Below, piece by piece: positions 40,099-64,000 of a DNA stretch of 64,000 nt. The notes under the pieces are model-generated. The model was not told the DNA's origin, did not search any database, and saw only the letters and a program-made list of their open reading frames with translations. This DNA is from Ostrea edulis (taxonomy: Eukaryota): NCBI RefSeq assembly GCF_947568905.1, contig NC_079173.1, positions 7,874,001-7,938,000 on the forward strand, read 5' to 3'. The first letter of the stretch is position 1. The number at the start of each line of letters is the position of its first letter. A program made the position numbers and the translations under genes.

Positions 40099-41385
40099 AT
40101 GCTATTAATAATGATGAATGCAAAATGTTTTCGAATTTATATTTTATCAATATCAATTCTATGTCTTGATGTGAAAATTACAACCTCATCTGATATCGAT
40201 GACCTGGTGGATTTTTACAATTCCTTGAAGACTAATTACGTGCCGTATATCAGGCCGGTACATAATCAGAGTCTTCCGATCACGGTCTCTATACATCTGG
40301 TTCTTCACTCTGTCGTTTCTTACGAAGAGAGAACTGGAACGCTCTCATCTCTAGTGATAATGAACATGTTTTGGACGGATAACGTACTGAAGACAAACTT
40401 CCCAAGGAAATTTGACACGGACATCCCGATCCCGATCTCTTTGGTGTGGAGTCCCACTATTCAGGTATACAATACAGTCACAGAGGATACAACAGTAAAA
40501 ACTGGGGACACCGACTTTAAAAAAATCCATTTGTACCCTAATGGAACTATGCTTTATTCCGTGATGGGTCTCACTACCACTAAATGCGAAGCTAACATTT
40601 TCTATTATCCAATGGATCGACAAAGATGCGAGATCCTCTTTTTAGGTGACGAACCATCCCAAAAAGTTGCAATAAAATCCCTATTTCTGGAGTCCCCGGA
40701 TTTGGACATTACAACCGCTCTAATGAAAAACGAAGAGTGGGAAATAGAAAACGTGACTTTAACAGACCACGTGTTTTATTTTTACCCAGGCATGATATTC
40801 TCTTTCAGTATTTCCAGACGACCTTCGTATCTCATGACTAACTTCGTCGTTCCACTTGCCTATCTTTGTTTACTGAATTTATTTGTGTTTCTTTTGCCGG
40901 AATCATCAGGGGAGAGAGTTTCGTATGCAGTCACAATACTTCTATGTCTAATTCTCTACCTGAACATGATTGCCGACCGTTTACCGAGTTCTGTTCCGAT
41001 CAGTTTGCTCAACATCTATATTGTCATTCAGTTCAACAGCAGCTGTTTTGTGGTGTTGATGACCATTCTTACACTGTGGATGTACAACAAACAGCAGGAT
41101 AATCAGCCCGTCACCAAGTTTTGGCAAGCGTTCATGCGTTTTGTAGACCCTAAGTGCTGGAGGAGAAGCCAGATGAACTTCCAAGCCGAAAAGACAGACG
41201 CTGAAGAGAAGGCTGACAAAATAGTGGAAAGTTACAGGATCCGAACAGAATCTGAGAAGGAGTCGAATGTCACGTGGTTTAAGGTGTCGCGATCAGCCAA
41301 TCGGTGTCTTTTTTGTATAATGTCTGTTTGCTTTAGCATTCAGGTACTTGTGTTTTTGGTTTTATTAATTGTTCAATATAATTAA
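40099..41385 (+). CDS. Intronless non-alpha nAChR-like Cys-loop channel subunit (paralog A1)
   Basis: 428-aa ORF with signal peptide, WSP, Cys-loop CEANIFYYPMDRQRC (C-x13-C), RRP-M1, PESSGER-M2, M3, short loop and M4. Confidence 0.92.
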   Translation: MLLIMMNAKCFRIYILSISILCLDVKITTSSDIDDLVDFYNSLKTNYVPYIRPVHNQSLPITVSIHLVLHSVVSYEERTGTLSSLVIMNMFWTDNVLKTNFPRKFDTDIPIPISLVWSPTIQVYNTVTEDTTVKTGDTDFKKIHLYPNGTMLYSVMGLTTTKCEANIFYYPMDRQRCEILFLGDEPSQKVAIKSLFLESPDLDITTALMKNEEWEIENVTLTDHVFYFYPGMIFSFSISRRPSYLMTNFVVPLAYLCLLNLFVFLLPESSGERVSYAVTILLCLILYLNMIADRLPSSVPISLLNIYIVIQFNSSCFVVLMTILTLWMYNKQQDNQPVTKFWQAFMRFVDPKCWRRSQMNFQAEKTDAEEKADKIVESYRIRTESEKESNVTWFKVSRSANRCLFCIMSVCFSIQVLVFLVLLIVQYN

Positions 41386-43170
41386 TATATATTAAGAGAT
41401 GTATACTCTGAACACTAATTAGTGTCTTGATACTATTCTTGTGAATGATAACATTTTATTGTAATCTAGTTTTGATACTTTGCGTGTCCATATTCTAGTC
41501 TGTTCGTGTTCGCCATTTCTGACACAATGTTAACTATGGTATCCATTTCTGGACCTTTCCCAGTACCTTTTGTATCAACCCAATCTTAATCGACTTAAGT
41601 TTTCATTTAATGGAGTTTCCTCTTTAACATATTTTATTGTATGATAATGTACCAATAAAAATGGTTTAGACAAAATTTCTTGTGACTTATAAAGTCAAAT
41701 TTCACATATGCTTTTACATATTCCATTATCGCCTGCATATGGTGTTTATATATCTCAACTGATTCGATATGCAAGAGCTTGTTCTGCGTGTAGTCAGATT
41801 TTTAATCGAGGTAAGCTACTCACAAACAAGTTGATGGTACAGGGATTTCAACAGTCTCGATTGAAGTCAGTATTTCGCAAATTCTATGGTCGTTATAACG
41901 ATATAGTTCGTCAATACAATCTATCATTGGGTCAAATGCTGTCTGACGTGTTTCATACCGATTGTTAAGCCGTTCTTGGCACATCGATTTTGACTACGGA
42001 TAACTCCGTTTACCTGAACAAGATATAGGGCTCACGGCGGGTGCAACCGGTCGACAGGGGATGCTTACTCCTCCTAGGAACCTGATCCCATATCTGGTGT
42101 GTCCAGGGGTCCGTGTTTGCCCAACTCTCTATTTTGTATTGCTTATAGGAGTTATGAGATTGCTCACTGTTCGTTATCTTCACCTTTCATGCTTACTATA
42201 AGGTTTTTTTGTAGTATCAATTTGGACATTATTATAGGAATAGATGTATGTATGTTTTTATCAAGCTACATAACTTATACCCTTTATTCAAATTAAAGAA
42301 TATAACTCAATAGAATTAAAAAGTAACAATATTAATTTCATATTTATATTCTCTCTGAGTCGGATAATAAACGCATCATTTATGAAAGTAAACACAAATA
42401 AGTCGGTGCGAAAGTTTGAAAGGTGAAGATACCTCCGTTTACCTGATAAAGATATTGGGCTCGGCGCGGGTGTGACCGACAGACAGGGGATGCTTACACC
42501 TCCTAGGCACCTGTTACCACCTCTGGTATATCCAGGGATTCGTGTTTGCCCAAATCTCTATTTTGTATTGCTTATTGGAGTTACGAGATTGATCACTGTT
42601 CGATATGTTAACCTTTCTCAACTGATTCGAAACACAAGATCTTGTTCTGAGTATGATGAGTTTTAAATTGAGGCAGACTACTGACAGAACGTTGATGTTA
42701 CAAAGGCTTCAACAGTCTTGTTTAAGGTAAACGTTTCGAAAATTCTAGGGTTGTTATAACGATCTTGTTTTAAATACAATCTGCCATTAGGTCGAATGCG
42801 CTCTGACGTGTTTCAGACCAATTTTTAAGTCGTTGTTTACATTCTAATCTTGACTACTGTTTACTCCATTTATATGATCAAGATCAGTGTTTGCCTTTAT
42901 CTTAATCTAGTATTTTTATAGGAGTTATGAGATTGATCACTGCTCGTTACCTTTACGTTTTCATACCTCTCCTTCCCTATGAGATATTCTTGCGTTGAAG
43001 AGATATATATATATTTAATTGCTATTGAAATTCATTTCAAAATTAAGGATTATCTCCCTCATGCATACTCTTATCCTTGGACAAATTTGGCTCCAGTTTT
43101 TGACACTCTAGGTTACCTTTTAGCTCTTTCAAGTTGATTTTTATTTCGAATTTCCAAAATGTCGGCTTGA

Positions 43171-43214
43171 GCATCACTGAAGAGACATTATTTGTCGAAA
43201 TGCGCATCTGGTGC
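43171..43214 (+). ncRNA. Type I minimal hammerhead ribozyme, intact copy (within partial monomer ~43010-43250)
   Basis: Stem I GCAUCA/UGGUGC, core CUGAAGA, stem II GACA-UUAUU-UGUC, GAA, palindromic stem III AUGCGCAU, cleavage after AUC. Confidence 0.85.
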
Positions 43215-44383
43215 ATCACAATTGGTACCATATAAGGTTTACATTTACATGCAGAACAATACGAAAATGAAAATGAATTTGTATCTAGTCTCGACAGTTT
43301 CCGATATTTCACAAAATGCAATAGAACTAGTTTCGATATAATATTTCAAACTCCTGTTATTAACATTGAATATTATGAATCACAACTCCATTTATCTGAG
43401 CGTTATATCCAATGAAAGTGTCTACAATTTGTAAAATTTTAAGAGTCAAAGAGGTTCGCACCTAAGATTTGGAGTAATGTAAATGTTTTGGGAAGTGTAT
43501 TTTTGATTTCTACATCGAAGGAAAATTAGGAAATTAAAAAGAAAAACTGGGGTTGCAATACTTGTTATTGAGCTACAATTTTCTAAACATGACCTTTTTG
43601 CACTTAAAAAATTATTCAATTAAACTTGATTTGTCTGTTGGTGTCAACACAACATAAGCAACACAAATCAATCATTACATAAAATAGATACATAATTATG
43701 TCTTCTAATAATAAAGATAAAAAAGTTGAATACAAGTAATGAAAATAAATAATGACGTTTTCCCACTTGATATCCGAAAAATCATGACATATCAAATTTG
43801 AGAGTTTAAAAGCACATGCTAGGAGTAATTTCAATTTCTAAAAGTTCACATAATTTTAAAGGTATAGTCTTCAAATGAAAAAATGGAATTTAAAAAGTGG
43901 GGATGAAACATCAAATTTTTAAATTATTGGTACAAATACTGAATTTTTAATACAAGATATCGAAAAAATTAATTTAAACGCTTTTAAGAATAGGTGTTCT
44001 CTTTGGAAAAATATATCAACCAAATTAATAAATTACAGCATTTGAACTATTTCCAAGTCTGAACTACGTATCTCATAAATTATAAAACTAAAATAAACGC
44101 ATAAGAGTATGAAAATAGAAGATATATTAGATGAAACAGAAACAGTAATATCATGCAGATTTAGAACGTTTGATTAATCAATCCTTTCGTATCCTGCGCA
44201 GTTGTGCTCAAACGGTCAGGAGCTAACTTCCTTAGGAGATAATTACAGAGAATTCAAACAAATTCGAAATCGTACAATCTGTAGTTTTGTTTGTTTTATG
44301 ATTTATGTAGGAATACAACGCCACCAGAATACTATGTATTCAGAAGTCAAACTTTTAAATTTAATCCCGAGTACGTATTCGAA

Positions 44384-45685
44384 TTAAAGAAAACGAACCA
44401 CTATTAACAGGATAAAGACAAGAATCTGAATGCACAAGAAAACAAAAGTAATTCTAAACAGAAATCGATTGGTTGATTGTGTCACATCAGTCCACGTGAC
44501 AATGGCCTCTTTCTCGGGTACTACTGAAATATTGTCACCAGTGATTACGCCATCTATCTCCTTGAGTTCGAAGTCATTCTCTGATTGGGGACTTTTTTGT
44601 CGTACTTTACGATCCGGTTTCCGGGAACATACACAATGCGTGATCCACATAAATGTTTGCCAACACCTTGGTACAGGCTGGTCTCCTGGCTGTTTAATGT
44701 ACATCCAGACAGTTAAGATGGTCATTAAAACGACGAAGCAGCTAGTGTTGTACTGAATGATGATATTTATGTTGATAAGGCTGACCGGTACAGTATTCGG
44801 TAGGCGATCAGCTATCATGTTCAGATATAGAGTTAAAGTCAACAGCATGGTGACTGAGTATGATATTCGCTCTCCTGAAGACTCCGGAAGAAGAAACACA
44901 AGGAGATTCAGAATGCACAGATACACCAGAGGAGCCACAAAATTCATCAAGAGATACATAGGACGTCTGCTAATATTGAAGGAAAGTGTAATGGTTGGAT
45001 ATGTATAGTACATTCCTGTTTTGCTCATTACGTGTTTTATATCCCATTCATCGTTTTCGATCAGAGCAGATGACCTGGCAGTGAATGTTTGGGAAGACGC
45101 CTGTATCATAACATTTTCGAATGATTCAGCACTCATGAAAATTATTTCGCATTTTTGTTCATCCATTGGGTAATACAACATATTTGCTTTGCACTTTGTT
45201 ATAGTCAAACCCATAACGGTCCATTCCATTGTTCCGTTAGGAGTAAGAAAAACTGTTTGAAATTTGCTGTCACTGGTCTTTATACCCGTGTCCTCTGTAA
45301 CAGTATTGTAGATACGCAGATCAGGGCTCCACACTAGAGAGGTGGGAATAGGGATATCGGTAACAACATCTTCTGAGAAGTTTGTCTTCACCAATTCGTC
45401 ATTCCATCGTTTGTGTAGAATAACCAGAGATGAAAGGGTCCCAGTTGTTTCTTCATATGAAACGACGGAGTGAAGTGCAATGTCTATGGAAACTGTAACC
45501 GGAAGATTCTGGTTCTTCACAGGTCTTATAAATGGCACGTGATCACTCATCAAGGATTTGTAAAATCCCATGAGATTGTCTACATCAATGGATGTTGAAA
45601 GTGGCACACAAATGAAAACAATATATATTAGTATATTGAGTTTTTGAAAACGCATCGTATGACTCATTATAGCTAAAATGGACAA
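44384..45685 (-). CDS. Intronless non-alpha nAChR-like subunit (paralog B)
   Basis: 433-aa ORF, Cys-loop CKANMLYYPMDEQKC, PESSGERISY, four TM segments. Confidence 0.92.
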   Translation of the reverse strand: MSILAIMSHTMRFQKLNILIYIVFICVPLSTSIDVDNLMGFYKSLMSDHVPFIRPVKNQNLPVTVSIDIALHSVVSYEETTGTLSSLVILHKRWNDELVKTNFSEDVVTDIPIPTSLVWSPDLRIYNTVTEDTGIKTSDSKFQTVFLTPNGTMEWTVMGLTITKCKANMLYYPMDEQKCEIIFMSAESFENVMIQASSQTFTARSSALIENDEWDIKHVMSKTGMYYTYPTITLSFNISRRPMYLLMNFVAPLVYLCILNLLVFLLPESSGERISYSVTMLLTLTLYLNMIADRLPNTVPVSLININIIIQYNTSCFVVLMTILTVWMYIKQPGDQPVPRCWQTFMWITHCVCSRKPDRKVRQKSPQSENDFELKEIDGVITGDNISVVPEKEAIVTWTDVTQSTNRFLFRITFVFLCIQILVFILLIVVRFL

Positions 45686-47396
45686 CAGTTCTTATAAAAA
45701 TCCAAAGAAAAAGTCAGAATGACATGCAGAGGTAGATATGCAAAATAAATGTGTCACTGGAAACCTTTCTCTAAACGTGTACCTCTGAAAACATCAATTG
45801 TGCATACATTATTGGGTTAAAAGTATTTAAACAGACAGTTCATTTCCTGTTTTTAAGAGAAATGCATTAAAATCATTAATACCTAGTGATTTAAATCGAA
45901 ATAACTTCGAAACATGATGAGTAAAAGAATAGGTTGGCTAGTATAACGATTGTTCTTCAGTTAATGGATATGCTTAAGTTTGTACATTTTGAATCCAACA
46001 CTCCTGATAAATGCCTGACAACCAAATCCATAGATAGGAGAGATTTGTCAAACATGCATTACCTCTATTGCATTAACGTATAATCACATTGTATTCGATT
46101 GTAGAGAAATATTTCGATACAACAGAGATCCACAAGGAAGAATAGACCCGCGATGTGTCAGACTGTATTCTGTATGTACTGTCTAATTCATTGTAGTGTA
46201 AACACTGCATCATTAAAATAATTCAATATTTCATTGGAAAGAGGGGTGGTAAAGGAACCCAGCATACAGTTTGGTTGCTGATATCATGTTTTTGCTCTTG
46301 CAACTAATAAAAATACCGCTATACAAGTTTTATATACTGAAAAATACAATTTTGTTAAATGCTACTTGTACGACGTTTGAATTAATTAAGATTCGAGCAG
46401 TAGAGCGAGCGCGTGTTCAAGGCTTGCGGAATTTTATAAAACACAAATTCTCTTTAAATCACAGCATACTAGTATCATATTCAATAAGATGAAAGGTGGA
46501 GATAACGAACAGTGATTAATCCCACCAATTCCATAGGCAAAACAAAATAGATAGCTGACACGGACCCCTGGACCAACCAGAGGTGGGTTCAGGGTGCCCA
46601 AAAGGAGCAAGCATCCCCTGTCGAGACCGGTCACACCCGCCGTAAGCTGTATATCCCAATCATGTAAACGGAGTTATCCGCAGCCAAAGCCAGCGGACAC
46701 GAACGGCCTAACAATCGGTATCAAACATGTCAGACAACATTTGACCCAATGGTAGGTTGTATTGGCAAACTAAATCGTTATAACGACCATAGAATTTGCG
46801 AAATGCTGATTTTAAACGATACAGGTGAAACCCCTGTACCATCAACTTGTTTGTCAGTAGATTGCCTCGATTTAAAAACTGATCACACGCAGAACAAGCT
46901 CTTGCGAATCGAATTAGTTGAGAGGTATAAACACCATATGCAGGTAATAATGGAATATTGCTACATAAATATTGGAAGTTGACGATGGAGAAGCTTTGCG
47001 TCTCGTGTGATCTAATGATACGCGCCTGTCAATTCGACGTGATCCAAATCTGTGGATCAAGTTAATGTAGTCATAATGTATATTTATCCCACGACCGGCC
47101 GTTTTTCTTCGATCTTTAGGAAGGTGTATATCACATGTTATCAAAAATGTGGAGATATTCATAATATCATATGTGCGATATCCAACTACTAATATCCCAA
47201 CGTTTCACAAAGGAGATAGAAGCCATGCAAATGAGACAAAGACAAGATTCAAAATTTAATCAAGATAGAATTTACAGAATTCTCTCACAAGTCTAAAAGA
47301 ATATTTAAAAAAGTAATAAAATCACGATTTCCATAGCGTTGAATAAATCACGTGAAGCAAATTGAAACTTATTATTAGTGGATGCAAAAATAACTA

Positions 47397-48229
47397 CAGT
47401 AAAACTCCAATATAGCGAACATGGATATAACGAAATTACGGCTATAGCGAAGTGAAAACGATTTCCCCGGCAAATTCTTTATATATTCTATATAAAAATC
47501 TGCGTCTATAACGAACACGGATATAGTGAATTTACGGATATAACGAAGTAAATTCCTATTCCCCTTGAATTAAAAATGAACGTAAAAATCACCTTTTATA
47601 ACGAATTTATTTTTTTCATTTTAAACTCTTTGTGATTTTTAACAATCGTTTTCCATTGACATAAAGGATCCACAATTATTACAAAAGTTTTGTTTGTATT
47701 TTTTCAAAAAAGGTTGTTAACGCAAAACAATACTTACACATACGTTTAGGAAATATATTGTCGGTATTGTTTACTATTCTCGTTAATTAAATTTGAAGTT
47801 TGATTGCATTTATTTTATCGTACACTCCTTTATTTGTGTAAAGCAACAAGTAAATGACAATTGCAATAGACTGTACATGTATGTATTGCGCAAAATTTTG
47901 TTGACATTTCTCTCTCGACATGTTCTTGCATGACTTAATAATCCATCAAGATAAATTACATATATCATATATAAATCAATGTGTATATTTCTTGTATAAA
48001 AATATTTCTTCTCGAAAATATATAAGTTTCATTTCACTTAAAGACAATGCAAACGCAAGTATATCGATTGCTGCTTTTTTATGTAACTGGTATACATGTA
48101 GAACAAATCAGTTTTATAACGAATTCGTTATATTTGAATTATGAATTCGCTATAAACGTATAGCGAATTACGCTTATAGCGAATTTTTATAGAGGGTCTC
48201 CAGAAATTCGCTATATCAGAGTTTTGCTG
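47397..48229. mobile_element. Tc1/mariner (pogo/Tigger-like) non-autonomous element
   Basis: TA|CAGTAAAACTCCAATATAGCGAA ... TTCGCTATATCAGAGTTTTGCTG|TA, with repeated TATA(G/A)CGAA subterminal motifs. Confidence 0.8.
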
Positions 48230-50696: not shown

Positions 50697-51977
50697 TCAC
50701 AAGATACGATGAATCATAGAAAAGAATAGAACAAGAAACTGAATACATAATATTACAAATGTTATGCGAAACAGAAACCGATTAGTGGAACTTATCACAT
50801 CGCTCCAAGTGACTGTTTCCTCTTTTTGGTGTCCTGGTATATTGTAGTCTTCCATCTGCCTTTCGTCTTGTTGGCGGACGTCTGCCTCCTTTTTAAACCG
50901 GAGATTTATCTTTACTGAATTTGTTTTTCTACAACACTTACGATTTGTTATTTGCATAAACACTAGCCAGAACCTAGGTATAGGCGGATTATTTTGCTGT
51001 TTATTGTGCATCCACAATGTCAGGATGGTCATCAACACCACAAAACAGCTGCTGTTGAACTGACTAACAACAAGTATATTGAGCAGGCTGATTGTCATGG
51101 TATTCGGAAGTCGGTCAGCAATCATGTTCAGATACAAAATCAGAGCCAGAAGCATTGTAACTGCGTACGATATACGCTCGCCTGATGATTCCGGAAGAAG
51201 AAAAACAAAAAGATTCAGTAAACATATATATGCAAGTGGGATCACGAAATTCATCGAGAGATATAAGGGTCGTCTGGATAAATTAAACGACATTGTGATA
51301 GATGGATAATGATGAAACATAATTCCTATTTCATAATGCACATTGCTTGCTTCCCATTCTTCATTTTTGACCAAAGGAGCCGTCGGATCCAATCCAACAT
51401 ACTCAATCAAATACGGTTGTATTACAACATATTTGAGTAGTTCACCCAAGAAGATTATTTTGCATTTTTGCTGATCCATCGGGTAATAAAATACATTGCC
51501 ATCGCATTTTGTTACAGTTAAACCCACATTTGTATATATAATTGTTCCGTTTGGAGACAAGAAGGCATTTTGAATACTAATTTCACCTGTTTTTAACACG
51601 GTGTCCTCTGTAACTGTGTTGTAAATACTAAAAATAGGATTCCATATCAAGGATTTAGAAATGGGAATATCATCGACGAAAGCGGACGAGAAGTTTGCGG
51701 TCACCAATTCATCTGTCCACTTTAAGTGCATGGTGATTAACGATGATAGAGTCCCGGTTCTCTCTTCGTAAGAGACAACAGAATGGAGTAGGAGATCTAC
51801 ATACACAGTAACCGGTTGACTCTGGTTCCTTACCGGCCTAATGTAGGGCTCGTGGTCATTCCTCAAGAAATTGTAAAACAATTTTAGATCGCCAACATCC
51901 ATCGACGATGAAAATTGCACACAATAGAATATATTTGCTGTGAATATAAAAGTCTGTAGACAACTCGTTTCCCTCAT
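50697..51977 (-). CDS. Intronless non-alpha nAChR-like subunit (paralog C1)
   Basis: 426-aa ORF, Cys-loop CDGNVFYYPMDQQKC, PESSGERISY. Confidence 0.92.
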   Translation of the reverse strand: MRETSCLQTFIFTANIFYCVQFSSSMDVGDLKLFYNFLRNDHEPYIRPVRNQSQPVTVYVDLLLHSVVSYEERTGTLSSLITMHLKWTDELVTANFSSAFVDDIPISKSLIWNPIFSIYNTVTEDTVLKTGEISIQNAFLSPNGTIIYTNVGLTVTKCDGNVFYYPMDQQKCKIIFLGELLKYVVIQPYLIEYVGLDPTAPLVKNEEWEASNVHYEIGIMFHHYPSITMSFNLSRRPLYLSMNFVIPLAYICLLNLFVFLLPESSGERISYAVTMLLALILYLNMIADRLPNTMTISLLNILVVSQFNSSCFVVLMTILTLWMHNKQQNNPPIPRFWLVFMQITNRKCCRKTNSVKINLRFKKEADVRQQDERQMEDYNIPGHQKEETVTWSDVISSTNRFLFRITFVILCIQFLVLFFSMIHRIL

Positions 51978-52934
51978 TTTAGCATTTAATGTTCAACTCC
52001 TATTATTGTTGATGATCATATAGTCGACATTAAGTGGACAGAAAACGTAGAGAATAACCAAATATTTAAAATCTCCAACTCTAAATGCGTTCGTCGGACA
52101 TAGTTGATTCTGTTCACATGGCGGGATTGAAAGATAATAATAGTAAAGCCATCCACATAAATATTGCCTTGACGAAGAGAGGGACTGATCCTCCAATAAA
52201 TCGAAATTATACGGACAGGTCTGTAAATAGAGTATTAACGATTATGCTATACTCTTTATCCAATTGTAATGGGATACATCATGCACAGTACATTTCAGTG
52301 TAAAGTGACATAAAGTCGGTTAAGTTACAGCCATGATTTTGTTTGAGATAAAAATATCTCGGTGGCTGTAACCTAATGGTTCCATTCCAGATCCCAGCAC
52401 GGCATTAAAACTTTTACATTCATTAATTGATTCTATATTGTTTAACGTCCCACTCGAGAATTTTCCCCTAATATGGAAACGTCCTCAATACCAGTGAAGG
52501 GCCTAAAATTTAGTCCTATGCTCGGCGTTTACGGCCGTTGAGCAGTGAGGGTTCTTTAGCATGCTACACCTACTGTGACACGGGACATCTGTTTTAAGGT
52601 CATCTCCGAGGACCTGTGACATTCACATCTGATGCCGAGCGTTTGACCATGGAACTGTCACTACCTGTTTTAACGACTTAGGTCTGTTGCGGCTGGGATT
52701 TGAAACCCGACCTTCATTATGCGGAACGAACGCTCTACCTCTAGACCACTACGGCAGTTCCATATTAAAATGAATTGACCAGTATGATTAATTATCCGTA
52801 TGACAGCCATGAACTTTTTCTGTTTGCTCCTTACAGCTGTATATGACCCTGCAATGAATTCTTGGATAATAAAATGAATCTTGATGTGAGTAATGTTTTA
52901 GGTCATCTGATTGACTAAGGTGACCTATTATAAT

Positions 52935-54105: not shown

Positions 54106-54149
54106 GCATCATTGAAGAGACATTATTTGTCGAAATGCGTATCTGGTGC
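54106..54149 (+). ncRNA. Hammerhead motif, mutated copy (core UUGAAGA), in partial monomer ~53963-54180
   Basis: Same stems, with C>T in the core and C>T in stem III. Confidence 0.65.
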
Positions 54150-54985: not shown

Positions 54986-55074
54986 TAATCTCGGCTGAGA
55001 TTCGGCTCGTTTGGATCATGTCGGTAAATGCGTCAGTCCAAATATCCTACCGAGTCGAATCTCAGCCAAGATTA
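54986..55074. mobile_element. 89-bp MITE with 9-bp TSD (AcademH-like)
   Basis: TIR TAATCTCGGCTGAGATTCGGCTCG / CGAGTCGAATCTCAGCCAAGATTA; perfect TSD GCTGGCGTG at 54977-54985 and 55075-55083. Confidence 0.75.
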
Positions 55075-55827
55075 GCTGGCGTGATGCTTTGCTGTGCATA
55101 TCTCATGCAATTTCAAAAATGAAATACATTTTTTTATATCTACATTTTACTTTCATATTTAATTCCTTATACAAAATCGTTGTAAATTATCAAAGATGTC
55201 TTCAATTGAATTAACGAGAGCATGAAATTCATTTATACCGAACACCAAACTAGATTTACCGATCAATAATTCTACGTCATTGGTGAGCACACTCAAATGA
55301 ATTGATGAGAGCAATGATTGAATTCATCGATGCACGCTTTAATTCAAATATTGTGCGCAATAATTAAATTGGTGATCTCTTCAAGTGATGAAAGATACAT
55401 TCAGTTGTTTGAGTTTAAGTTTATTTGGCACTCTATAAAACAATGGTGCTTCTCCCAAAAGTCTTTATGTTAAAGCTGTATGGTCCATGTTCGTCTATGA
55501 CTTTTTTGCACAAAAATACTTTAAAGTAGGTTAAGTAGTTTTTAAAGTTAATGATTTTTCTTTAAGTACATGCTTGAAAACATTTCCATGTAAAAGAAAG
55601 CAACAAGATTATTTAAAAAGTAAATATAGCGGGTACACATTAATTACATTTGGCGCTAGTATTTAGGCGTCTATAAATTCTATAAATAGCCCCACGCACA
55701 TTAAGGAAACCTCAACATGATGTACATGTATCTAACTTAGATGCAATTCTCTAAATTGGTGTGAAAGAGCGTGAAAAACAAAGACTTACGAAGAGGTATA
55801 TGATATTTTTATTTCTCTTTAACTTAA

Positions 55828-56748
55828 AGGACACAACGCTTGTTTCTATTTTTTTTCAGGAAAATTCATTCTTTTCATGCCTAAAACTACTTTACATATG
55901 TTTTTAATTAACTATTTTGCGAAGTTTTCGAGTTTGAAAGCGATGAAATTCAAATATTTACTTTCGTTATTTTACGCGCCATTATGTGTGACATCATATG
56001 CGCCCTCAGGTTTGAAAACATCTATTAGCCATTTCATATACAGATTAGATTTAATCGACAAAAAAAACCAAAACAATTATCCCGTTAATGGCTTGTAAAT
56101 AAGATTGCATTAAGGCGGTTTGTGGAATGTAAGGATGTAGTAGTTGTCGGTAGAAAGGATTTCGACTGAGTATTTTTCTATTTTCGAAGAAACGTATGGA
56201 AAAAAGACATGGATAAAAAAATTTGATGGAGCAAGAACTTTACCTTAAAAATCCTCCACCCTGTCACCTTTTCAAACACTATTTGGACAGAGACCCAGAT
56301 AAACTGCGAGAAAATGGATAAATCGAAGCTAAACACTGCTAGGCCTACAGCATAATTACATAATTCTGTTCTGATCTTCAAATTCAATACACACTCGGAT
56401 CAACTGAGCTTCACCTTGTAACATCATAACTTTGCTCCTGGTTTCCACTAACTGGTAGATTTACAAAAATGTTAAAGATACAAAATAACTGAACTTTTAA
56501 TTATAAATAATAGAATATTGTATTTCCTAACTTTAAATTGAAGTATAAATCTATTTCTCATTGAATTCGTAACATTCTGAGTGCGTCTACACCACGCCGT
56601 TGTCTCACTTCCTAACCGACGTGCAGATTACAATTCAAAAATCATAAGATTGCTTTATTAGGATAGAATATTAAAATAAAATATTGCGATCATAAGGAAG
56701 ACGAAATGCACGTAATTTTGTATACTTTGAGAACATGAGATGTGTCCT
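55828..56748. mobile_element. Kolobok-like non-autonomous element
   Basis: TTAA|AGGACACA ... TGTGTCCT|TTAA (8-bp TIR, TTAA on both sides). Confidence 0.55.
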
Positions 56749-56945
56749 TTAAGGTACAGTGCTGTAGTAACAAAATACTCGGCTTTGTCTGTCTGGATTC
56801 GTGCATTAGAAATAGCCGAGTGACATTTGTTTGTATACACCAATTCAAAATTAAATAATTCTGGTTAAAACAGGTGAAATAATGTCAGACATTTCGTACA
56901 GCCTCATCAATACGTATGTAAAACTTATACGGTACCAATTTTGAT

Positions 56946-56989
56946 GCACCAGATACGCATTTCGACAAATAATGTCTCTTCAGTGATGC
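56946..56989 (-). ncRNA. Hammerhead motif with intact core, in partial monomer ~56915-57260
   Basis: Reverse complement reads GCATCA CTGAAGA GACATTATTTGTC GAA ATGCGTAT C TGGTGC. Confidence 0.75.
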
Positions 56990-57782
56990 TCAACCGAAAT
57001 GTTTGAAATCCGAAATAACTATGAAGTTTTGGAGCTAAATATAGCCAAGAACAGCGTGCCAAAAAAGTGGAGCCAAATTCGTCCAAGGATAAGAGCTATG
57101 CATGAGGGAGATAATCCTTAATTTTGAAATGAATTTCTAAATTTTATAACAGCAATTAAATATACATCCGTATTTTCAAGCTAGTAACGAAGTACTTAGT
57201 TTACAAAGTACTCTTCAGTGATGCTCAACCGAAATGTTTGAAATCCGAAATAACTATGCGATCTTTTAACAGTGTTTTTAAAAGGTAGAAAAATTGTCGA
57301 AATCCGGACCATAAAACTTTAAAGGTACATGTAATAACATATTGCTAAAATATACACGACTCATCATAATTCAACGACTAAAATTTCATTGGTTTTCTTT
57401 ATGCTATTGCTTTGTATCAGAAAAAGCCACTTTGTAATTTTCACAAATGATAAATGGTTATTCCGTCTGAGAATCGATTCTTTTTTGTTTAAAAAATGGT
57501 TTGTATGAAATCTGTGCAAGCTTGATTAATACATGGGGTACACAAGGCTCCTGGGTTACTTTGTTAATGTATCTCCGTATTTGCACAAGATAAAAGGTCT
57601 TGTTCGAAAAATGGATTTCCTAAACTCTTTGGCTCTTGTTACATCAGTTGACCAATGACGTTCCTAGAACGCATTCACTGCATCATATTCTCATTTATAA
57701 AATTGTGTACATTAATTCTTTACTGTCGACAGTACTTCAGTTCTGATCATAAAGATCTAGGTCACTGCACGTTAAGAAATAA

Positions 57783-59063
57783 ATGCTATTAATAATGATG
57801 AATACGAAATATTTTCGAATTTATCTTTTATCAATATCAATTCTATGCCTTAATGTGAAAATTACAACCTCATCTGATATCGATGACCTGGTGGATTTTT
57901 ACAATTCCTTGAAGAATAATTACGTGCCGTATATCAGGCCGGTACATAATCAGAGTCTTCCGATCACGGTCTCTATACATCTGGTTCTTCACTCTGTCGT
58001 TTCTTACGAAGAGAGAACTGGAACGCTCTCATCTGTAGTGATAATGAACATGTTTTGGACGGATGACGTACTGAAAACAAACTTCCCAAGGAAATTTGAC
58101 ACGGACATCCCGATCCCGATCTCTTTGGTGTGGAGTCCCACTATTCAGGTATACAATACAGTCACAGAGGATACAACATTAAAAACTGGGGACACCGAAT
58201 TTAAAAAAATCCTTTTGTATCCTAACGGAACTATGCTTTATTCCGTGATGGGTCTTACTACCACTAAATGCGAAGCTAACATTTTCTATTACCCAATGGA
58301 TCGACAAAGATGCGAGATCCTTTTTGTAGGTGACGAACCATCCCAAAAAGTTGCAATAAGATCTCTATTTCTGGAGTCCCCGGATATGGACATTACAACC
58401 GCTCTAATGAAAAACGAAGAGTGGGAAATAGGAAACGTGACTTTAACAGACCACGTGTTTTATCTTCACCCAGGCATGATATTCTCTTTCAGTATTTCCA
58501 GACGACCTTCGTATCTCATGACGAATTTCGTCGTTCCGCTTGCGTATCTTTGTTTACTGAATTTGTTTGTGCTTCTTTTGCCGGAATCATCAGGAGAGAG
58601 AGTTTCCTTTGCAGTCACAATGCTTCTATGTCTAATTCTCTACCTGAACATGATTGCCGACCGTTTACCGAGATCTGTTCCGATCAGTTTGCTCAACATC
58701 TATATTGTCATTCAGTTCAACAGCAGCTGTTTTGGGGTGTTGATGACCATTCTCACACTGTGGATGTACAACAAACAGCAGAATAATCAGCCCGTCACCA
58801 AGTTTTGGCAAGCGTTCATGCGTTTTGTAGATCCTAAGTGCTGGAGGAGAAGCCAGATGAACTTCCAAGCCGAAAAGACAGAAGCTGAAGAAAAGGCTGA
58901 CAAAATAGTGGAAAGTTACAGGATCCGAACGGAATCTGAGAAGGAGTCGAATGTCACGTGGTTTAAGGTGTCGCGATCAGCCAATCGGTGTCTGTTTTGT
59001 ATAATGTCTGTTTGCTTTAGCATTCAGGTACTTGTGTTTTTGGTTTTATTAATTGTTCATTAG
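57783..59063 (+). CDS. Intronless non-alpha nAChR-like subunit (paralog A2, recent duplicate of A1)
   Basis: 426-aa ORF nearly identical to 40099-41385; flanks ~57360-59400 match ~39670-41700. Confidence 0.92.
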   Translation: MLLIMMNTKYFRIYLLSISILCLNVKITTSSDIDDLVDFYNSLKNNYVPYIRPVHNQSLPITVSIHLVLHSVVSYEERTGTLSSVVIMNMFWTDDVLKTNFPRKFDTDIPIPISLVWSPTIQVYNTVTEDTTLKTGDTEFKKILLYPNGTMLYSVMGLTTTKCEANIFYYPMDRQRCEILFVGDEPSQKVAIRSLFLESPDMDITTALMKNEEWEIGNVTLTDHVFYLHPGMIFSFSISRRPSYLMTNFVVPLAYLCLLNLFVLLLPESSGERVSFAVTMLLCLILYLNMIADRLPRSVPISLLNIYIVIQFNSSCFGVLMTILTLWMYNKQQNNQPVTKFWQAFMRFVDPKCWRRSQMNFQAEKTEAEEKADKIVESYRIRTESEKESNVTWFKVSRSANRCLFCIMSVCFSIQVLVFLVLLIVH

Positions 59064-61289
59064 AACAAGAAATGTATATTCTGAACACCAATTAGCGTCT
59101 TTCTTTACACTATTCTAGTGAATGATAACATTTTATTGTAATCTAGTTTTGATATTTCCCGTGTCCATATTTTATTCTGTTCATGTTCGATATTTCTTAC
59201 ATAGTATTAACTATGGTATTCATTTCTGGACCTTTCCCAGTTGTTTGTGCATTAACCTAATTTTAATCAACTTAGTTTACTTTTGAGCATATTTTACTGT
59301 ATGATAATGTACCAATAAAAGTGGTTTAGACACAAGTTCTAAGAAATTAGAAAGTCAAATTTTACACATGATTGCTATTGTAAAAGCTATTTGTGCCGTG
59401 TCAATGAGACATTATTCTAGGAAGAAATGTATGTGATTTTATCAAGCTACATAACTTATACACTTTATTCCAATTATAGAATATGACTCAATCGAATAAA
59501 AAAGTACAAATATTGATTTCATATTTATATTCTCTCCGAGTTGGATAATAAACGCTCCATTTATTAAAGTAAACAGAACTATGGCGATGTAAAAGCTTGA
59601 AAGGTGAAGATAGCGAAAAGTGATCAATCTCATAACTCCTGTAAGGAATACAAAATAGAGAGTTGGGCAAACACGCATATTAACTCTTGGATTTACCAGA
59701 GTTGGGATCACGTACCTAGGAGGAGTAAGCATCCCCTGTCAACTGGTCACATCCGCCGTGAGCCCATGATGAATTAATCCGTAGTCAAAATCAGTATGCT
59801 GAGAACGACTTTACAATCGATATTAAACACGCCAAACAGCATTTGACCCAATGATAGGTTGTATTGACCAACTAGATTATCATACCAACCACAGCAATTT
59901 CAAAAACTCGATTTGAAACGAGACTGTTGAAACTCCCGTAACATCAACTTGTCTGTCAGTAGCTTGCCTTGATTTAAAAACTGATCATACGCAGAACAAG
60001 CTCTCGCGTATCGAATCAGTTGAGAGAAATAAACACTGTATGTAGGTGATAATGAAATATTGCTACATAAATATGGAAAGTTGACGATGGAGAAGCTGAA
60101 ATCATCCCGTTTGTCCTAAAGTTGAGTTGTTAGTTTGCCGTTAATATTCAAGCAATGGATTATTATTTTCTGAAAGACGCAGTCCCACAACTGCAACGAT
60201 GTGTGTATACAAATTGAAAAATGCGCGTTAGCTCGTTATTGAAATTTACATGCACACACCGCCGCAGCCACGAGACCACATCTTTCAAGAAAACAACAAT
60301 TCATTTCTTATACTTACGTTTTAGAATATACATTCTGCTGACTGTTGGTGGAACAATTCAGCGATTACAGAAAGAAAAGGTCAATCAGACAGGGAGCAGG
60401 TTTAGGGAAAACTACTTTCAGTGATGGAGGTGTGATGGGGTTGGGTATTTTTTACGTCCGTCGAGAATTTTCCACTCATATTGATACATCGTCTGTTGTA
60501 GATGTAGTGCTACAAATTTAGACCTATGCTTACCGCTTATGGCCGTAGCAGTGAGGGTTCTTTAACATGCCAAGGCCTGCCGTGTGTTAAAGGTCATATC
60601 CGAAAGACCCTTGATTCTTACTTTCAGATACCGAGCGTTTGGTGAAGGAACGATCACTAATAGGAACTATCAAAATATACTAACTCTCTAAAAAAAGACA
60701 TGGAAATATTCTCCAATAGTTTTGTAGAAACGAGATAGAATGCAAATGAAGTATAATTGAAATATCACGAAACAATACCTATGATCGAGAAACGTCTCGT
60801 ATGTCCTTATACAAGTAGAAAATTCGGTAAGCATTATATATACAAAAACAATTCATATACTAGTCCATAAATCTGTGTAATAAACATGCATTGTTATGTC
60901 ATTGATTGTACATATAGATTTGACATTAATTCAAAACGCTTATGCACGTTATGGTTATTGCAATACATTTTATCTAGATATTGTTAACGTGGTTTCGATA
61001 TTGGTCTACATTCTAAAATGTAGTTGTAGTCATCGGCTACTTGTCGTTTTTTTGCATGATCTTTCAATAACAGGGTTGTCTTCCAACTCCCCAACTTCGA
61101 CTGGTAAACGGTTGATTGAGGTTCTAAATATTACCAAAAACAATCATGAATGTTCGTGGTATATATCTAATTAAAACCAGGAAGAAAGGTTATTCTGTAT
61201 GAGCTTTTATCATAATGAACATGGAGCATTTAGGGCTCTACTTGGACCTGTGAACATATAACAAAAATCTGTACAGTTATAATGCCGTA

Positions 61290-61780
61290 ATTTGCATAGT
61301 AACTTGGACATAAATACGTCACAAAGGTTACAACGAGCATTTGATAAACTCCTAAGTAAAGATCACACGGCATCCATCAAAGGTAGATTTGTTGGCAAAA
61401 CTGCACGGCTTCTGTTAGATATATTTGAATTTTATGAATCGAATAATGAAGATGGTATTTTTTTTCAAAACTTTTCAAAAGATTTTTACTCTACAGATTG
61501 GAAAAAATTAATTTTGGTCCCCAGTTTTTGAGATGGATAACACTTCTATATGAAAATCCAGTCAATGAAATATAATGGTTGCATCTCTAAATCATGCGTA
61601 ATGAAAAAAGGAATCAGACAAGGATGTCCCATTTCAGTAATAATTTTCCTTTTGTTGTAGAAATAAGGTCACTAAAATTAAGTTCGCTGAAAATATAAAA
61701 AGAAAAGGTTTTACGAACGACACTATGGACACCGAAACAAAACTTCTATAGAATGCTGAGGATGCTTGATTGCCATTATT
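61290..61780 (+). pseudogene. Degenerate L1/Tx1-type LINE reverse transcriptase fragment
   Basis: GRFVGKTARLLLDI, WITLLY and GIRQGCPIS motifs interrupted by stops and frameshifts. Confidence 0.7.
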
Positions 61781-62745
61781 AGATGTAAAATATATGGAAA
61801 AGGCAACAGTTTTAATCAATAACTTTAATCAAGCTTCAAACATGAAGAAAGCAGGGGAGACCTACTCCTCCTACGCGCCTGATCCCACCTCTGGTGTGTC
61901 CAGAGGTCCGTGTTTTTCCAACTCTCTATTTTGTATTGCTTATAGGAGTTATGAGATTGATCACTGACATACCCAAAACAAACTCGCGACTTTTACTGCT
62001 AATGCCTGACGCTTGGTAAACATTTTCTAAAGGGTTTAAACCCGTGGGGATCCGTGTTAGAATAAATAGGTCATCAGTACCCCTTGCTTGTCGTAAGAGA
62101 CAACTAAATGAGGCGGTCTTCGAAAGAGACTCCAAAATCGACGCCCTGTGTCACAGCACGCTAAAGATCTTTCTGTGTTCATAGGCTGTAAGCGCCTAAC
62201 ATAAACCTTCATTTTGCAGCCCTTCACCGGCAATGGTAACGTCTCCATATGAGTGGAAAATTCTCGAGTGGGACGTTAATCAATATACAATCAGTTAATC
62301 AATATAAAGATTTGAATGGTGTGCTGGTGTCGGAAATGGAACCATCAGGCTACCACAACCGGCATAAAAAATTTTTATCTGAAACAAAAAAATCGTTGTA
62401 GCATGACAAACATTATGTCAGGTTAAACTGAAATTTGCTATGCATGATGTATTCCATTAAGATTGGATTAAAGGTATAGCATAATTGTCATTAGTATATT
62501 TATAGACCTTTCTGTATAATTACGATTTATTGGAGGTTTCCTCCTTCTCTTCTTAATGCATTATCTGTGTTGATCGATTTCCTCTTATGCTCTTTGAATC
62601 TGATCATGTGAACAAAATCCACTATGTCCGTCGAACGCATTTAAAGTTGGAATATTTAGATATTTGTTTATTCTTTACGCTTTCGGTAGACTTTAATGCC
62701 AACTACATGATTATGATCAATAGCTGTTGAACAGTTAATGGTAAA

Positions 62746-64000
62746 ATGAGGGAAACGAACTTTATATTCACAGCAATTATATTGTCTTGTGTGCCACTTT
62801 CATCGTCGATCGGTGTTGGCGATCTGAAATTATTTTACAACTTCTTGAGGAATGACCACGAGCCCTACATTAGGCCGGTAAGGAACCAGAGTCAACCGGT
62901 TACTGTGTATGTAGACCTCCTACTCCATTCTGTTGTCTCTTACGAAGAGAGAACCGGGACTCTATCATCGTTAATCACCATGAACTTAAAGTGGACAGAT
63001 GAATTGGTGACCGCAAACTTCTCGTCCGCTTTCGTCGATGATATTCCCATTTCTAAATCCTTGATATGGAATCCTATTATTAGTGTTTACAACACAGTTA
63101 CAGAGGACACCGTGTTAAAAACAGGTGAAATTAGTATTCAAAATGCCTTCTTGTCTCCAAACGGAACAATTATATATACAAATGTGGGTTTGACTGTAAC
63201 AAAATGCGATAGCGATGTATTCTATTACCCAATGGACCATCAAAAATGCAAAATAATCTTTCTGGGCGAACCTCTCAAATATGTTGTAATACAACCGTAT
63301 TTGATTGAGTATGTTGGATTGGATCCGACGGCTGCTTTGGTTAAAAATGAAGAATGGGAAGCAAGCAATGTGCATTATGAAATAGGAATTATGTTTCATC
63401 ATTATCCATCTATCACAATGTCGTTTAATTTATCCAGACGACCCCTATATCTCTCGATGAATTTCGTGATCCCACTTGCGTATATATGTTTACTGAATCT
63501 TTTTGTTTTTCTTCTTCCGGAGTCATCAGGAGAACGTATATCGTACGCAGTTACAATGCTTCTAGCTCTGATTCTATATCTCAACATGATTGCCGATCGA
63601 CTACCAAATACCGTGACAATCAGCCTGCTCAATATACTTATTGTCATTCAGTTCAACAGCAGCTGTTTTGTGGTGTTGATGACCATCCTGACCCTGTGGA
63701 TGCACAATAAACAGCAAAATAATCAACCTGTACCAAAGTGTTGGCTAGTGTTTATGCAAATTACAAATCGTAAGTGCTGTAGAAAAACAAATTCCGTAAA
63801 GATCAATCCTCAGTTTGAAAAGGAGGCAGAAAACCGCAAAAAAGACGAGAAGCAGATGGAAGACTACAATATGCCAGGATGCGAAAAAGAGGAAACAGTC
63901 ACTTGGAGCGATGTGATAAGTTCCACGAATCGGTTTCTGTTTCGCATAACATCTGCAATATCATGTATTCAGTTTCTTGTTCTATTCTTATCAATGATTC
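62746..64000 (+). CDS. Intronless non-alpha nAChR-like subunit (paralog C2), running off the window end; missing from the ORF track
   Basis: ATG at 62746, MRETNFIFTAIILSCVPLSSSIGVGDLKLFYNFLRNDHEPY..., collinear with C1 and still in frame at ...LFLSMI at 64000. Confidence 0.88.
   Translation, partial: MRETNFIFTAIILSCVPLSSSIGVGDLKLFYNFLRNDHEPYIRPVRNQSQPVTVYVDLLLHSVVSYEERTGTLSSLITMNLKWTDELVTANFSSAFVDDIPISKSLIWNPIISVYNTVTEDTVLKTGEISIQNAFLSPNGTIIYTNVGLTVTKCDSDVFYYPMDHQKCKIIFLGEPLKYVVIQPYLIEYVGLDPTAALVKNEEWEASNVHYEIGIMFHHYPSITMSFNLSRRPLYLSMNFVIPLAYICLLNLFVFLLPESSGERISYAVTMLLALILYLNMIADRLPNTVTISLLNILIVIQFNSSCFVVLMTILTLWMHNKQQNNQPVPKCWLVFMQITNRKCCRKTNSVKINPQFEKEAENRKKDEKQMEDYNMPGCEKEETVTWSDVISSTNRFLFRITSAISCIQFLVLFLSMI

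What the first reader, a model, noticed from the sequence alone, without database searches (positions are those of the whole stretch)
40099..64000. Cluster of five intronless nAChR-like channels that have lost the acetylcholine-binding site: candidate chemosensory receptors
Seen: all five keep the Cys-loop and the G-E-R ring before M2, the cation-selective signature. Aligned by eye to the alpha7 nAChR they lack loop D Trp (I/T instead), loop B Trp (FLGDE/FLGEL/FMSAE) and the loop C YxCC. Loop C is 5-6 residues shorter (W-to-YP spacing 15-16 versus 21) and differs between paralogs (DHVFYFY, DHVFYLH, GIMFHHY, TGMYYTY). Established: bivalves have large, partly intronless nAChR expansions, and cephalopod chemotactile receptors are intronless, tandem nAChR derivatives without the ACh site. 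Inference: this may be a parallel, mollusc-specific array of ligand-diversified sensory channels, possibly heteromeric A/B/C.
Basis: partly seen in the sequence, partly recalled or inferred. Interest (0 to 1): 0.78.

Follow-up and report, generated by a model that had tools for sequence, protein, structure and literature searches.

The report
Oyster orphan nAChR-like channel gene array
Five uninterrupted genes for nicotinic-receptor-like ion channel subunits that cannot bind acetylcholine in the usual way sit side by side in an oyster genome and are kept by selection. They belong to an already described bivalve-wide expansion of such orphan channels, and a sensory role is untested.

Summary
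The window carries five Cys-loop channel ORFs without introns in the coding sequence: A1, C, B1 and A2 are complete, and B2 is cut by the window end. All keep the Cys-loop, the -1' Glu and the 9' Leu. All lack the loop B Trp, the loop D Trp and the loop C Cys-Cys, and loop C is 5-6 residues shorter than in alpha7.

They are real genes. dN/dS is 0.16-0.31 in every pair, and the young duplicates A1/A2 and B1/B2 depart significantly from neutrality. The locus is syntenic with Saccostrea echinata, where two copies lie between a CARD gene and a TGF-beta gene. Ostrea edulis has three tandem copies.

The missing ACh site is not special to this cluster. The genes sit inside a well-supported 41-sequence clade, and every member lacks the same residues. 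Its four named members are all bivalves (two oyster proteins, a mussel and a scallop).

Loops B, C and F vary most (16-35% identity against 87% for M2), but no region reaches omega above 1. No RNA data could be found, so expression and tissue are unknown. Octopus and squid chemotactile receptors showed no special similarity.

Published work already describes such intronless tandem expansions and raises the receptor-diversification idea. The same scan also flagged a similar cluster elsewhere in this genome. Verdict: a new member of a known kind, with the chemosensory reading unproven.

The parts
40099..41385 (+). Gene A1: complete uninterrupted ORF, 428 aa, with signal peptide, extracellular domain and M1-M4
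   Evidence: ORF; Pfam LBD 2.7e-24 and TM domain 1.9e-06; loop D I, loop B D, no Cys-Cys, -1' E, 9' L
44384..45667 (-). Gene C: complete ORF, 427 aa from the first ATG at 45667 (the ORF as listed runs to a TTG at 45685)
   Evidence: alpha7 alignment showing W55 to I, W149 to A and a 5-residue loop C deletion; groups with the Saccostrea genes in the tree
50697..51977 (-). Gene B1: complete ORF, 426 aa
   Evidence: AlphaFold2 model with mean pLDDT 89.2 and four TM helices; best structural matches are nAChR and 5-HT3A chains
57783..59063 (+). Gene A2: complete ORF, 426 aa, a recent duplicate of A1
   Evidence: 94% protein identity to A1; dS 0.08, omega 0.31, p = 1.5e-4 against neutrality; loop C tip differs from A1 (FY in A1, LH in A2)
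62746..64000 (+). Gene B2: ORF open for 418 codons and cut by the window end about 8 codons before the expected stop; a recent duplicate of B1
   Evidence: dS 0.17, omega 0.25, p = 3e-9
39671..41713 (.). Duplicated block holding A1 with about 430 bp upstream and 330 bp downstream; its partner is 57364-59373 (91.6% nucleotide identity, same orientation)
   Evidence: Self-blastn
50711..52565 (.). Duplicated block holding B1 with about 590 bp upstream; its partner is 62155-64000 (87.6% identity, inverted)
   Evidence: Self-blastn. The inverted orientation and the absence of a second C copy argue against a falsely duplicated haplotype
41718..42195 (.). Very high-copy interspersed repeat next to A1. 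Further copies lie at 46485-46958 and 59593-60060, both inverted. It lies between the channel genes
   Evidence: Self-blastn; summed contig depth of up to millions over 41691-44277 in whole-genome runs

Best explanation
The five genes encode full-length subunits of cation-selective pentameric ligand-gated channels. They belong to an old, bivalve-restricted branch of the nicotinic / 5-HT3-like superfamily that lost the acetylcholine aromatic box long before this array formed. Each ORF gives a signal peptide, a beta-sandwich extracellular domain with an intact Cys-loop, M1-M4 and a short cytoplasmic loop. The subunits most likely assemble into pentamers, homomeric or mixed, and open a conserved cation pore (-1' Glu, 9' Leu, 20' Asp). 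The trigger would be a ligand other than acetylcholine that binds the remodelled pocket between subunits, with loops B, C and F setting specificity.

The array sits at a fixed chromosomal position in oysters, between a CARD gene and a TGF-beta-family gene. In this lineage it grew to at least five genes: three old types (A, B, C) plus two recent single-gene duplications.

Shown: architecture, residues, purifying selection, synteny, clade membership. Inferred: channel function, insensitivity to ACh, non-cholinergic ligand. Unknown: whether the ligand is environmental (sensory) or endogenous, and where the genes are expressed.
For: Both Pfam domains are present in the four complete ORFs. The AlphaFold2 model has pLDDT 89 with helices at 237-260, 266-287, 298-329 and 391-425. 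It matches nAChR and 5-HT3A chains at TM 0.7-0.8 and Z 27-30. Alpha7 is the best sequence match, and under a clade profile 5-HT3A is almost equal.

The binding-site Trp and Cys-Cys are absent, while the Cys-loop, -1' E and 9' L are kept. dN/dS is 0.16-0.31 for all pairs, and selection since the recent duplications is significant (p = 1.5e-4 and 3e-9). M2 is 87% identical across genes that are about 46% identical overall, whereas loops C, F and B are 16%, 21% and 35% identical.

The orthologous S. echinata locus has two intact intronless copies flanked by a CARD gene and a TGFb-propeptide gene. The CARD-gene exon is orthologous to window 13494-14960. O. edulis has three tandem copies.

The oyster clade is monophyletic (SH-aLRT 99). 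It lies inside a 41-sequence clade (SH-aLRT 100) whose four named members are Saccostrea (two proteins), Mytilus and a scallop. All 41 lack loop B Trp, loop D Trp and the Cys-Cys. A profile search of 5.8 billion proteins finds only 13 clade members, and the named ones are all Saccostrea or Ostrea. The score then falls from 442 bits, through one 241-aa fragment at 264 bits, to 203 bits and below.
Against: There is no expression evidence of any kind. No RNA run was on record for this organism, and the four runs of unknown type turned out to be whole-genome DNA. No functional data exist for any member of the clade. The same sequence features fit silent 'structural' subunits that join ACh-binding alpha subunits. 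Faster evolution of loops B, C and F could reflect relaxed constraint on a disused pocket rather than ligand tuning, since omega is below 1 there. Most members of the 41-sequence clade are unnamed, so 'bivalve-restricted' rests on four named members.
Confidence: 0.72

Rival explanations
1. One reading: the array encodes peripheral chemosensory receptors, analogous to cephalopod chemotactile receptors. They would be expressed on surfaces facing the water (mantle edge, gill, palps, larval foot) and gated by environmental small molecules.
For: The CDS is intronless, the genes are in tandem, and the ACh site is missing, as in the chemotactile receptors (literature). The pocket loops are the most variable part of the extracellular domain. 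Gene number varies between oysters: 2, 3 and at least 5. There are recent duplicates whose loop C tips differ. Bivalve nAChR-like genes are reported to be most highly expressed in gill (PMC6896357).
Against: There are no expression data for these genes. No region has omega above 1. The young B1/B2 pair has omega 0.09 in the pocket loops. The same site loss is shared by a whole old bivalve clade, so it says nothing specific about sensing. The chemotactile receptors are not among the best 60 PDB sequence matches or the best 50 structural matches.
Confidence: 0.2
2. They are accessory or structural subunits, like beta1, beta3 or alpha5. They would fill non-binding positions in heteropentamers whose ACh sites come from canonical alpha-type subunits encoded elsewhere, so the receptors would remain cholinergic.
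For: A short loop C without Cys-Cys is typical of non-alpha subunits. The pore and gating elements are extremely conserved (M2 87% identity), as expected if they must match partner subunits. The loop A Tyr is kept.
Against: Both the principal-face loop B Trp and the complementary-face loop D Trp are gone in all 41 clade members, while 51 of the 93 other relatives keep the loop B Trp. Three old paralog types are maintained side by side, and loops B, C and F are still under some constraint (omega 0.3-0.6). That level of constraint is more than a purely structural face would need.
Confidence: 0.2
3. They are unexpressed retrocopies or decaying pseudogenes left over from the bivalve nAChR expansion.
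For: No RNA holder was found. Jiao et al. report that intron-poor nAChR genes are more often silent than intron-rich ones.
Against: All four complete ORFs are intact, and B2 is open for 418 codons. Omega is 0.16-0.31 with significant purifying selection even since the latest duplications. Intact orthologues lie at the syntenic locus in Saccostrea, and tandem copies in Ostrea.
Confidence: 0.05

Closest known systems
Bivalve intronless, tandemly arrayed nAChR expansion (Jiao et al. 2019, BMC Genomics, PMC6896357)
   Same: The coding sequence is intronless, the genes are in tandem and lineage-specific, and the ligand-binding domain is diverse. In C. gigas only 33 of 132 genes are alpha-type and only 13 keep the full principal site. 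The authors already suggest binding of diverse ligands.
   Different: This clade (window species, Saccostrea, Ostrea) was not singled out there. Its fixed position between a CARD gene and a TGF-beta gene, and its A/B/C structure, are described here only.
Cephalopod chemotactile receptors CRT1 and CRB1 (van Giesen 2020; Allard 2023; Kang 2023, as cited in PMC10338036 and PMC13174522)
   Same: Both are nAChR-derived, intronless, tandemly arrayed and without the ACh-binding signature.
   Different: There is no special sequence or structural affinity: alpha7, 5-HT3A, muscle subunits and Alpo4 all rank above them. The nearest named relatives are bivalve proteins. Sensory expression and gating by hydrophobic ligands are shown for the chemotactile receptors and unknown here. 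A tree including chemotactile receptor sequences could not be built.
'CR-like' and other divergent clades of the MolluscaGenes nAChR survey (bioRxiv 2026, PMC13174522)
   Same: The preprint reports chemotactile-receptor-like sequences in bivalves, and clades with substituted ACh-coordinating residues. It raises independent shifts to other ligands as an open question.
Human alpha7 nAChR and 5-HT3A receptor
   Same: Same fold, Cys-loop, -1' Glu, 9' Leu and overall subunit architecture. These are the best PDB matches (129-160 bits, 22-26% identity).
   Different: Loop B Trp, loop D Trp and the loop C Cys-Cys are absent. Loop C is 5-6 residues shorter and the cytoplasmic loop is short, about 60 residues.
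Alpo4, an orphan nAChR-like receptor of the worm Alvinella pompejana (eLife 2023, PMC10338036)
   Same: It is a lophotrochozoan orphan without the loop C Cys-Cys that does not respond to ACh or serotonin. It is a precedent for how hard such receptors are to de-orphanise.
   Different: Alpo4 keeps the aromatic cage (F103, W159, Y199, Y205, W65), and the oyster proteins do not. Alpo4 scores lower than alpha7 and 5-HT3A against the clade profile (114 bits).

Membership tests
Cys-loop pentameric ligand-gated ion channel superfamily | Neur_chan_LBD and Neur_chan_memb domains above Pfam thresholds | tested here: met
   The LBD scores 81-108 bits against a cut-off of 26. The TM domain scores 25.7-40.5 bits against a cut-off of 28.1, so it is just under the curated cut-off in two ORFs but with E at or below 1.6e-05
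Cys-loop pentameric ligand-gated ion channel superfamily | Cys-loop of two Cys 13 residues apart with the aromatic-Pro-x-Asp core | tested here: met
   C-x13-C with Y-P-M-D in all five
Cys-loop pentameric ligand-gated ion channel superfamily | Beta-sandwich extracellular domain followed by four transmembrane helices | tested here: met
   AlphaFold2 model with pLDDT 89.2 and four long helices; Z 27-30 to nAChR and 5-HT3A chains
Acetylcholine-gated nicotinic receptor subunit (ACh-binding) | Loop B Trp (alpha7 W149) for the cation-pi contact | tested here: not met
   D in A1 and A2, A in C; in B1 and B2, aligned to a gap and read by eye as E. No Trp anywhere near loop B
Acetylcholine-gated nicotinic receptor subunit (ACh-binding) | Loop C Y-x-C-C (alpha-type principal face) | tested here: not met
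   No vicinal Cys; the only Cys in the mature extracellular domain are those of the Cys-loop; loop C is 5-6 residues shorter
Acetylcholine-gated nicotinic receptor subunit (ACh-binding) | Loop D Trp (alpha7 W55) on the complementary face | tested here: not met
   I in A and C, T in B
Acetylcholine-gated nicotinic receptor subunit (ACh-binding) | Cation-selective M2 (-1' Glu, no -2' Pro insertion, 9' Leu gate) | tested here: met
   S-G-E-R followed by the 9' Leu, invariant across the oyster clade
Acetylcholine-gated nicotinic receptor subunit (ACh-binding) | Current evoked by ACh or nicotine | not testable with these tools
   Needs electrophysiology
Cephalopod chemotactile receptors | nAChR-derived subunit without ACh-binding residues, encoded by intronless genes in tandem | tested here: met
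   'Intronless' is shown for the coding sequence only
Cephalopod chemotactile receptors | Phylogenetic membership of the cephalopod chemotactile receptor clade | tested here: inconclusive
   Their sequences could not be brought into a tree. Indirect evidence is against membership: they are not among the best PDB matches, and the named nearest relatives are all bivalve proteins
Cephalopod chemotactile receptors | Expression in peripheral sensory epithelium | not testable with these tools
   No RNA run was available for this organism
Cephalopod chemotactile receptors | Gating by poorly soluble natural products (terpenoids, bitter compounds) | not testable with these tools
   Needs heterologous expression
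Bivalve intronless/tandem nAChR-like expansion (Jiao et al. 2019) | Uninterrupted coding sequence, tandem arrangement and lineage-specific clustering of paralogues within bivalves | tested here: met

The most novel reading that the evidence does not exclude
The array between the CARD and TGF-beta genes is an oyster-specific set of environmental chemoreceptors that evolved independently of the cephalopod chemotactile receptors from an ACh-blind bivalve channel lineage. Types A, B and C would form mixed pentamers, and recent duplicates such as A1/A2, with different loop C tips, would tune them to different waterborne or surface-bound cues such as settlement or microbial signals.
Probability: 0.15. 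Interest if true: 0.75.

Novelty: new member of a known kind. Interest (0 to 1): 0.35.

Why it matters
Bivalves carry 100-200 nicotinic-like genes, and almost none has a known ligand. This array is compact and syntenic, is clearly under selection, and has three old types plus two young duplicates. That makes it a practical set for de-orphanisation, and for asking whether sessile molluscs reuse channel receptors to sense their surroundings as octopuses do. As it stands it adds a well-defined example to a published phenomenon and does not reveal a new one.

Tried and rejected
1. Expression. Both run searches (kinds 'any' and 'rna') returned no run on record as RNA. The four runs of unknown type were laid on 39900-45850. 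They cover genes and intergenic DNA evenly and show repeat pile-ups, so they are whole-genome DNA and say nothing about transcription.

2. Population SNPs as a selection test. For A1, 8 of the 9 'non-synonymous variants' are exactly the A1-to-A2 differences, so they come from paralogue cross-mapping and I discarded them. For the single-copy gene C the listed variants are 9 synonymous and 11 non-synonymous. That hints weakly at constraint, but the list is incomplete (36 rows not shown).

3. Transcript evidence from a homologue's Logan contig (L002). Its A-run is at the wrong end for a poly(A) tail, and the flanks look intergenic, so it is uninformative.

4. Direct comparison with octopus and squid chemotactile receptors. 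They appear in none of the PDB lists, and no tool supplied their sequences, so no joint tree was built.

5. Positive selection on the pocket. Regional Nei-Gojobori omega is never above 1. Codon site models were not available, and dS is saturated for the older pairs.

6. False duplication of haplotypes as the source of A1/A2 and B1/B2. I rejected this because B2 is inverted relative to B1, there is no second C copy, and nucleotide divergence is 8-12%.

7. The ESM Atlas feature search only repeated the family assignment. It gave nothing for the flanking 488-aa ORF.

Full report
WHAT IS THERE

The region 40.1-64.0 kb holds five open reading frames of one family:
- A1, 40099-41385, plus strand
- C, 45667-44384, minus strand
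- B1, 51977-50697, minus strand
- A2, 57783-59063, plus strand
- B2, 62746 to the window end, plus strand

A tblastn of the ORFs against all 64 kb finds these five loci and no further fragments. The four complete ORFs carry Pfam Neur_chan_LBD and Neur_chan_memb. Each runs from a Met with a hydrophobic leader to the end of M4 without interruption. B2 is open for 418 codons and lacks only about 8 codons because the window ends. A1/A2 are 94% identical in protein, B1/B2 90%, and the three types 52-57%.

CHECK OF THE RESIDUE CLAIMS

The HMMER alignment of C to human alpha7 (best PDB hit, 1.7e-36) puts I at W55 (loop D) and A at W149 (loop B). It places a 5-residue gap where alpha7 has E-C-C-K-E. 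A MAFFT alignment of 134 relatives, anchored on a canonical tunicate alpha7-like protein, gives these residues:
- Loop D: I in A and C, T in B.
- Loop B: D in A and A in C. In B the position is aligned to a gap and is read by eye as E.
- No Cys-Cys in any of the five.

This does not depend on the alignment. The A and B types contain only three Trp in the extracellular domain, at positions conserved in all family members. C has those three plus one more (W155), and none lies near loop B or D. The only Cys in the mature extracellular domain are the two of the Cys-loop. Counted on the and alignments, the W-to-YP spacing is 15-16 against 21 in alpha7.

The following are kept:
- the C-x13-C Cys-loop with Y-P-M-D
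- S-G-E-R before M2 (-1' Glu)
- the 9' Leu and the 20' Asp
- the loop A Tyr
- a Tyr at the alpha7 Y195 position, except H in A2

ARE THEY REAL GENES?

Nei-Gojobori dN/dS is 0.16-0.31 for every pair. For the young duplicates:

| Pair | Non-synonymous changes / sites | Synonymous changes / sites | Fisher p |
|---|---|---|---|
| A1/A2 | 24 / 1000 | 21 / 278 | 1.5e-4 |
| B1/B2 | 40 / 984 | 41 / 270 | 3e-9 |

So constraint has acted since the latest duplications.

An AlphaFold2 model of B1 built on 73 relatives has mean pLDDT 89.2 and the expected beta-sandwich plus four long helices. It matches nAChR and 5-HT3A chains at TM 0.7-0.8 and Z 27-30.

HISTORY OF THE LOCUS

The best database homologue, from Saccostrea echinata, lies in a locus with two divergently oriented, intact, intronless ORFs of 424 and 422 aa. 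These sit between a CARD-domain gene and a TGFb-propeptide gene.

The window has a CARD ORF at 20617-21186. It also has a 488-aa exon at 13494-14960 that is orthologous to the Saccostrea CARD-gene exon (2e-90). The position is therefore conserved, and the array holds 2 genes in S. echinata against at least 5 here. Ostrea edulis has three tandem copies, the third apparently broken.

Within the window, the A and B duplications are single-gene blocks of about 2 kb including their flanks:
- 39671-41713 and 57364-59373, 91.6% identity
- 50711-52565 and 62155-64000, 87.6% identity, inverted

Copies of one very high-copy repeat lie between the genes. The inverted orientation of B2 and the missing second C copy argue against a haplotype duplication artefact.

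WHERE THE FAMILY SITS

An exhaustive phmmer search of 1.84 billion representatives gives three close hits at 42-54% identity. Full-length hits then fall to 33% or below.

A profile of the clade, searched against 5.8 billion proteins, finds only 13 members. The named ones are all Saccostrea or Ostrea. The score then falls from 442 bits, through one 241-aa fragment at 264 bits, to 203 bits and below.

In a tree of 134 sequences (IQ-TREE, quick search) the 18 oyster sequences form one clade (SH-aLRT 99). Within it, A, B (with an unnamed metagenome oyster sequence) and C (with the Saccostrea genes) are separate lineages. This clade lies inside a 41-sequence clade (SH-aLRT 100). Its four named members are Saccostrea cucullata (two proteins), Mytilus coruscus and the scallop Ylistrum balloti.

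The key result is that all 41 members lack the loop B Trp, the loop D Trp and the Cys-Cys, while keeping the Cys-loop, an acidic -1' residue (Glu in 40, Asp in one) and the 9' Leu. By contrast, 51 of the other 93 relatives keep the loop B Trp. The 'loss of the ACh site' is therefore old, apparently predating the split of oysters, mussels and scallops, and is not a property of this array.

IS THE POCKET DIVERSIFIED?

Across 11 representative clade members:

| Region | Mean pairwise identity |
|---|---|
| M1-M2 linker and M2 | 0.87 |
| M1 | 0.65 |
| Cys-loop | 0.61 |
| Loop B | 0.35 |
| Loop F | 0.21 |
| Loop C | 0.16 |
| Cytoplasmic loop | 0.27 |

Regional omega for loops B, F and C together is 0.09-0.72 (mostly 0.3-0.6). 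For the rest of the extracellular domain it is 0.08-0.26 in the older pairs and 0.55 in A1/A2, and it is never above 1. A1 and A2 differ at two adjacent residues of the loop C tip (F-Y against L-H). B1 and B2 are almost identical in these loops (omega 0.09).

The pattern fits either ligand tuning or weaker constraint on these loops, and the data cannot separate the two.

RELATION TO THE CEPHALOPOD CHEMOTACTILE RECEPTORS

By single-sequence and by profile search of the PDB, alpha7 (129-160 bits) and 5-HT3A (up to 156 bits) lead. Muscle and neuronal nAChR subunits follow, and the orphan Alpo4 scores 114 bits. No chemotactile receptor appears in the best 60 sequence matches or the best 50 structural matches. 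I could not obtain chemotactile receptor sequences for a joint tree, so independence from them is likely but not proven.

EXPRESSION

No public run on record as RNA holds the gene. The four runs of unknown type cover genes and spacers evenly, so they are genomic DNA.

WHAT IS ALREADY KNOWN

Jiao et al. 2019 (PMC6896357) describe 99-217 nAChR genes in bivalves. Many are intronless and in tandem arrays. In C. gigas only 33 of 132 are alpha-type and only 13 keep the full principal site. Expression is highest in gill, and the authors suggest that the diversity of the ligand-binding domain may allow diverse ligands.

A 2026 preprint (PMC13174522) reports 'CR-like' sequences in bivalves and clades with substituted ACh-coordinating residues. 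It explicitly raises independent transitions to other ligands.

The Alpo4 study (PMC10338036) shows how such lophotrochozoan orphans can resist de-orphanisation.

The same scan also flagged a similar cluster elsewhere in this genome.

VERDICT

The sequence observation is correct and the genes are functional by evolutionary criteria. They are best read as orphan, cation-selective, probably ACh-insensitive channel subunits of an old bivalve lineage, arranged in a syntenic, slowly expanding oyster array. The chemosensory interpretation is a reasonable but untested hypothesis, at about 0.2. An accessory-subunit role is about as likely, and pseudogene status is unlikely. This is a new member of a known kind and of moderate interest.

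Noticed in passing
window 13494-14960 (-) and 20617-21186 (-): These are two exons of a CARD-domain gene. The 488-aa Ser-rich exon is orthologous (39% identity, 2e-90) to the exon next to the channel pair in Saccostrea echinata. That anchors the synteny of the locus.
   Followed up: partly
window 22551-29512 (ORFs 24459-24977 + and 25834-26529 -): A transposon-like stretch lies between the CARD gene and the channel array. It has a DDE_Tnp_4 fragment (7.8e-31) and an intact YqaJ-type nuclease ORF (5.1e-17).
   Followed up: partly
window 41691-44277; copies at 41718-42195, 46485-46958, 59593-60060: Interspersed repeats of extreme copy number, with summed contig depth up to millions in whole-genome runs, sit between the channel genes. 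One element recurs beside A1, between C and B1, and after A2. It may have mediated the rearrangements. No tandem structure was found.
   Followed up: partly
window 38725-39029 and 39373-39677: A 305-bp direct repeat at 98.7% identity lies just upstream of the A1 duplication block, and its second copy ends where the block begins.
   Followed up: no
L004 16831-18063 (Ostrea edulis): The third tandem copy in O. edulis aligns in two pieces (16831-17448 and 17504-17884) and has no long ORF. It is probably a pseudogene, which is a sign of gene birth and death in the array.
   Followed up: partly
L001 9908-11176 (Saccostrea echinata): One of the two Saccostrea copies has a 2-residue deletion at the end of M1 (L-N-L-F-L-L-P instead of L-N-L-F-V-F-L-L-P). 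The NCBI gene models for both copies (391 and 339 aa) are shorter than the full ORFs (422 and 424 aa).
   Followed up: no
window 3747-5027 (+): A 426-aa ORF with a TTG start and no Pfam match. It is not related to the channel genes.
   Followed up: partly
window 522-721: A run of 200 N (assembly gap or masked stretch). I left it untouched.
   Followed up: no
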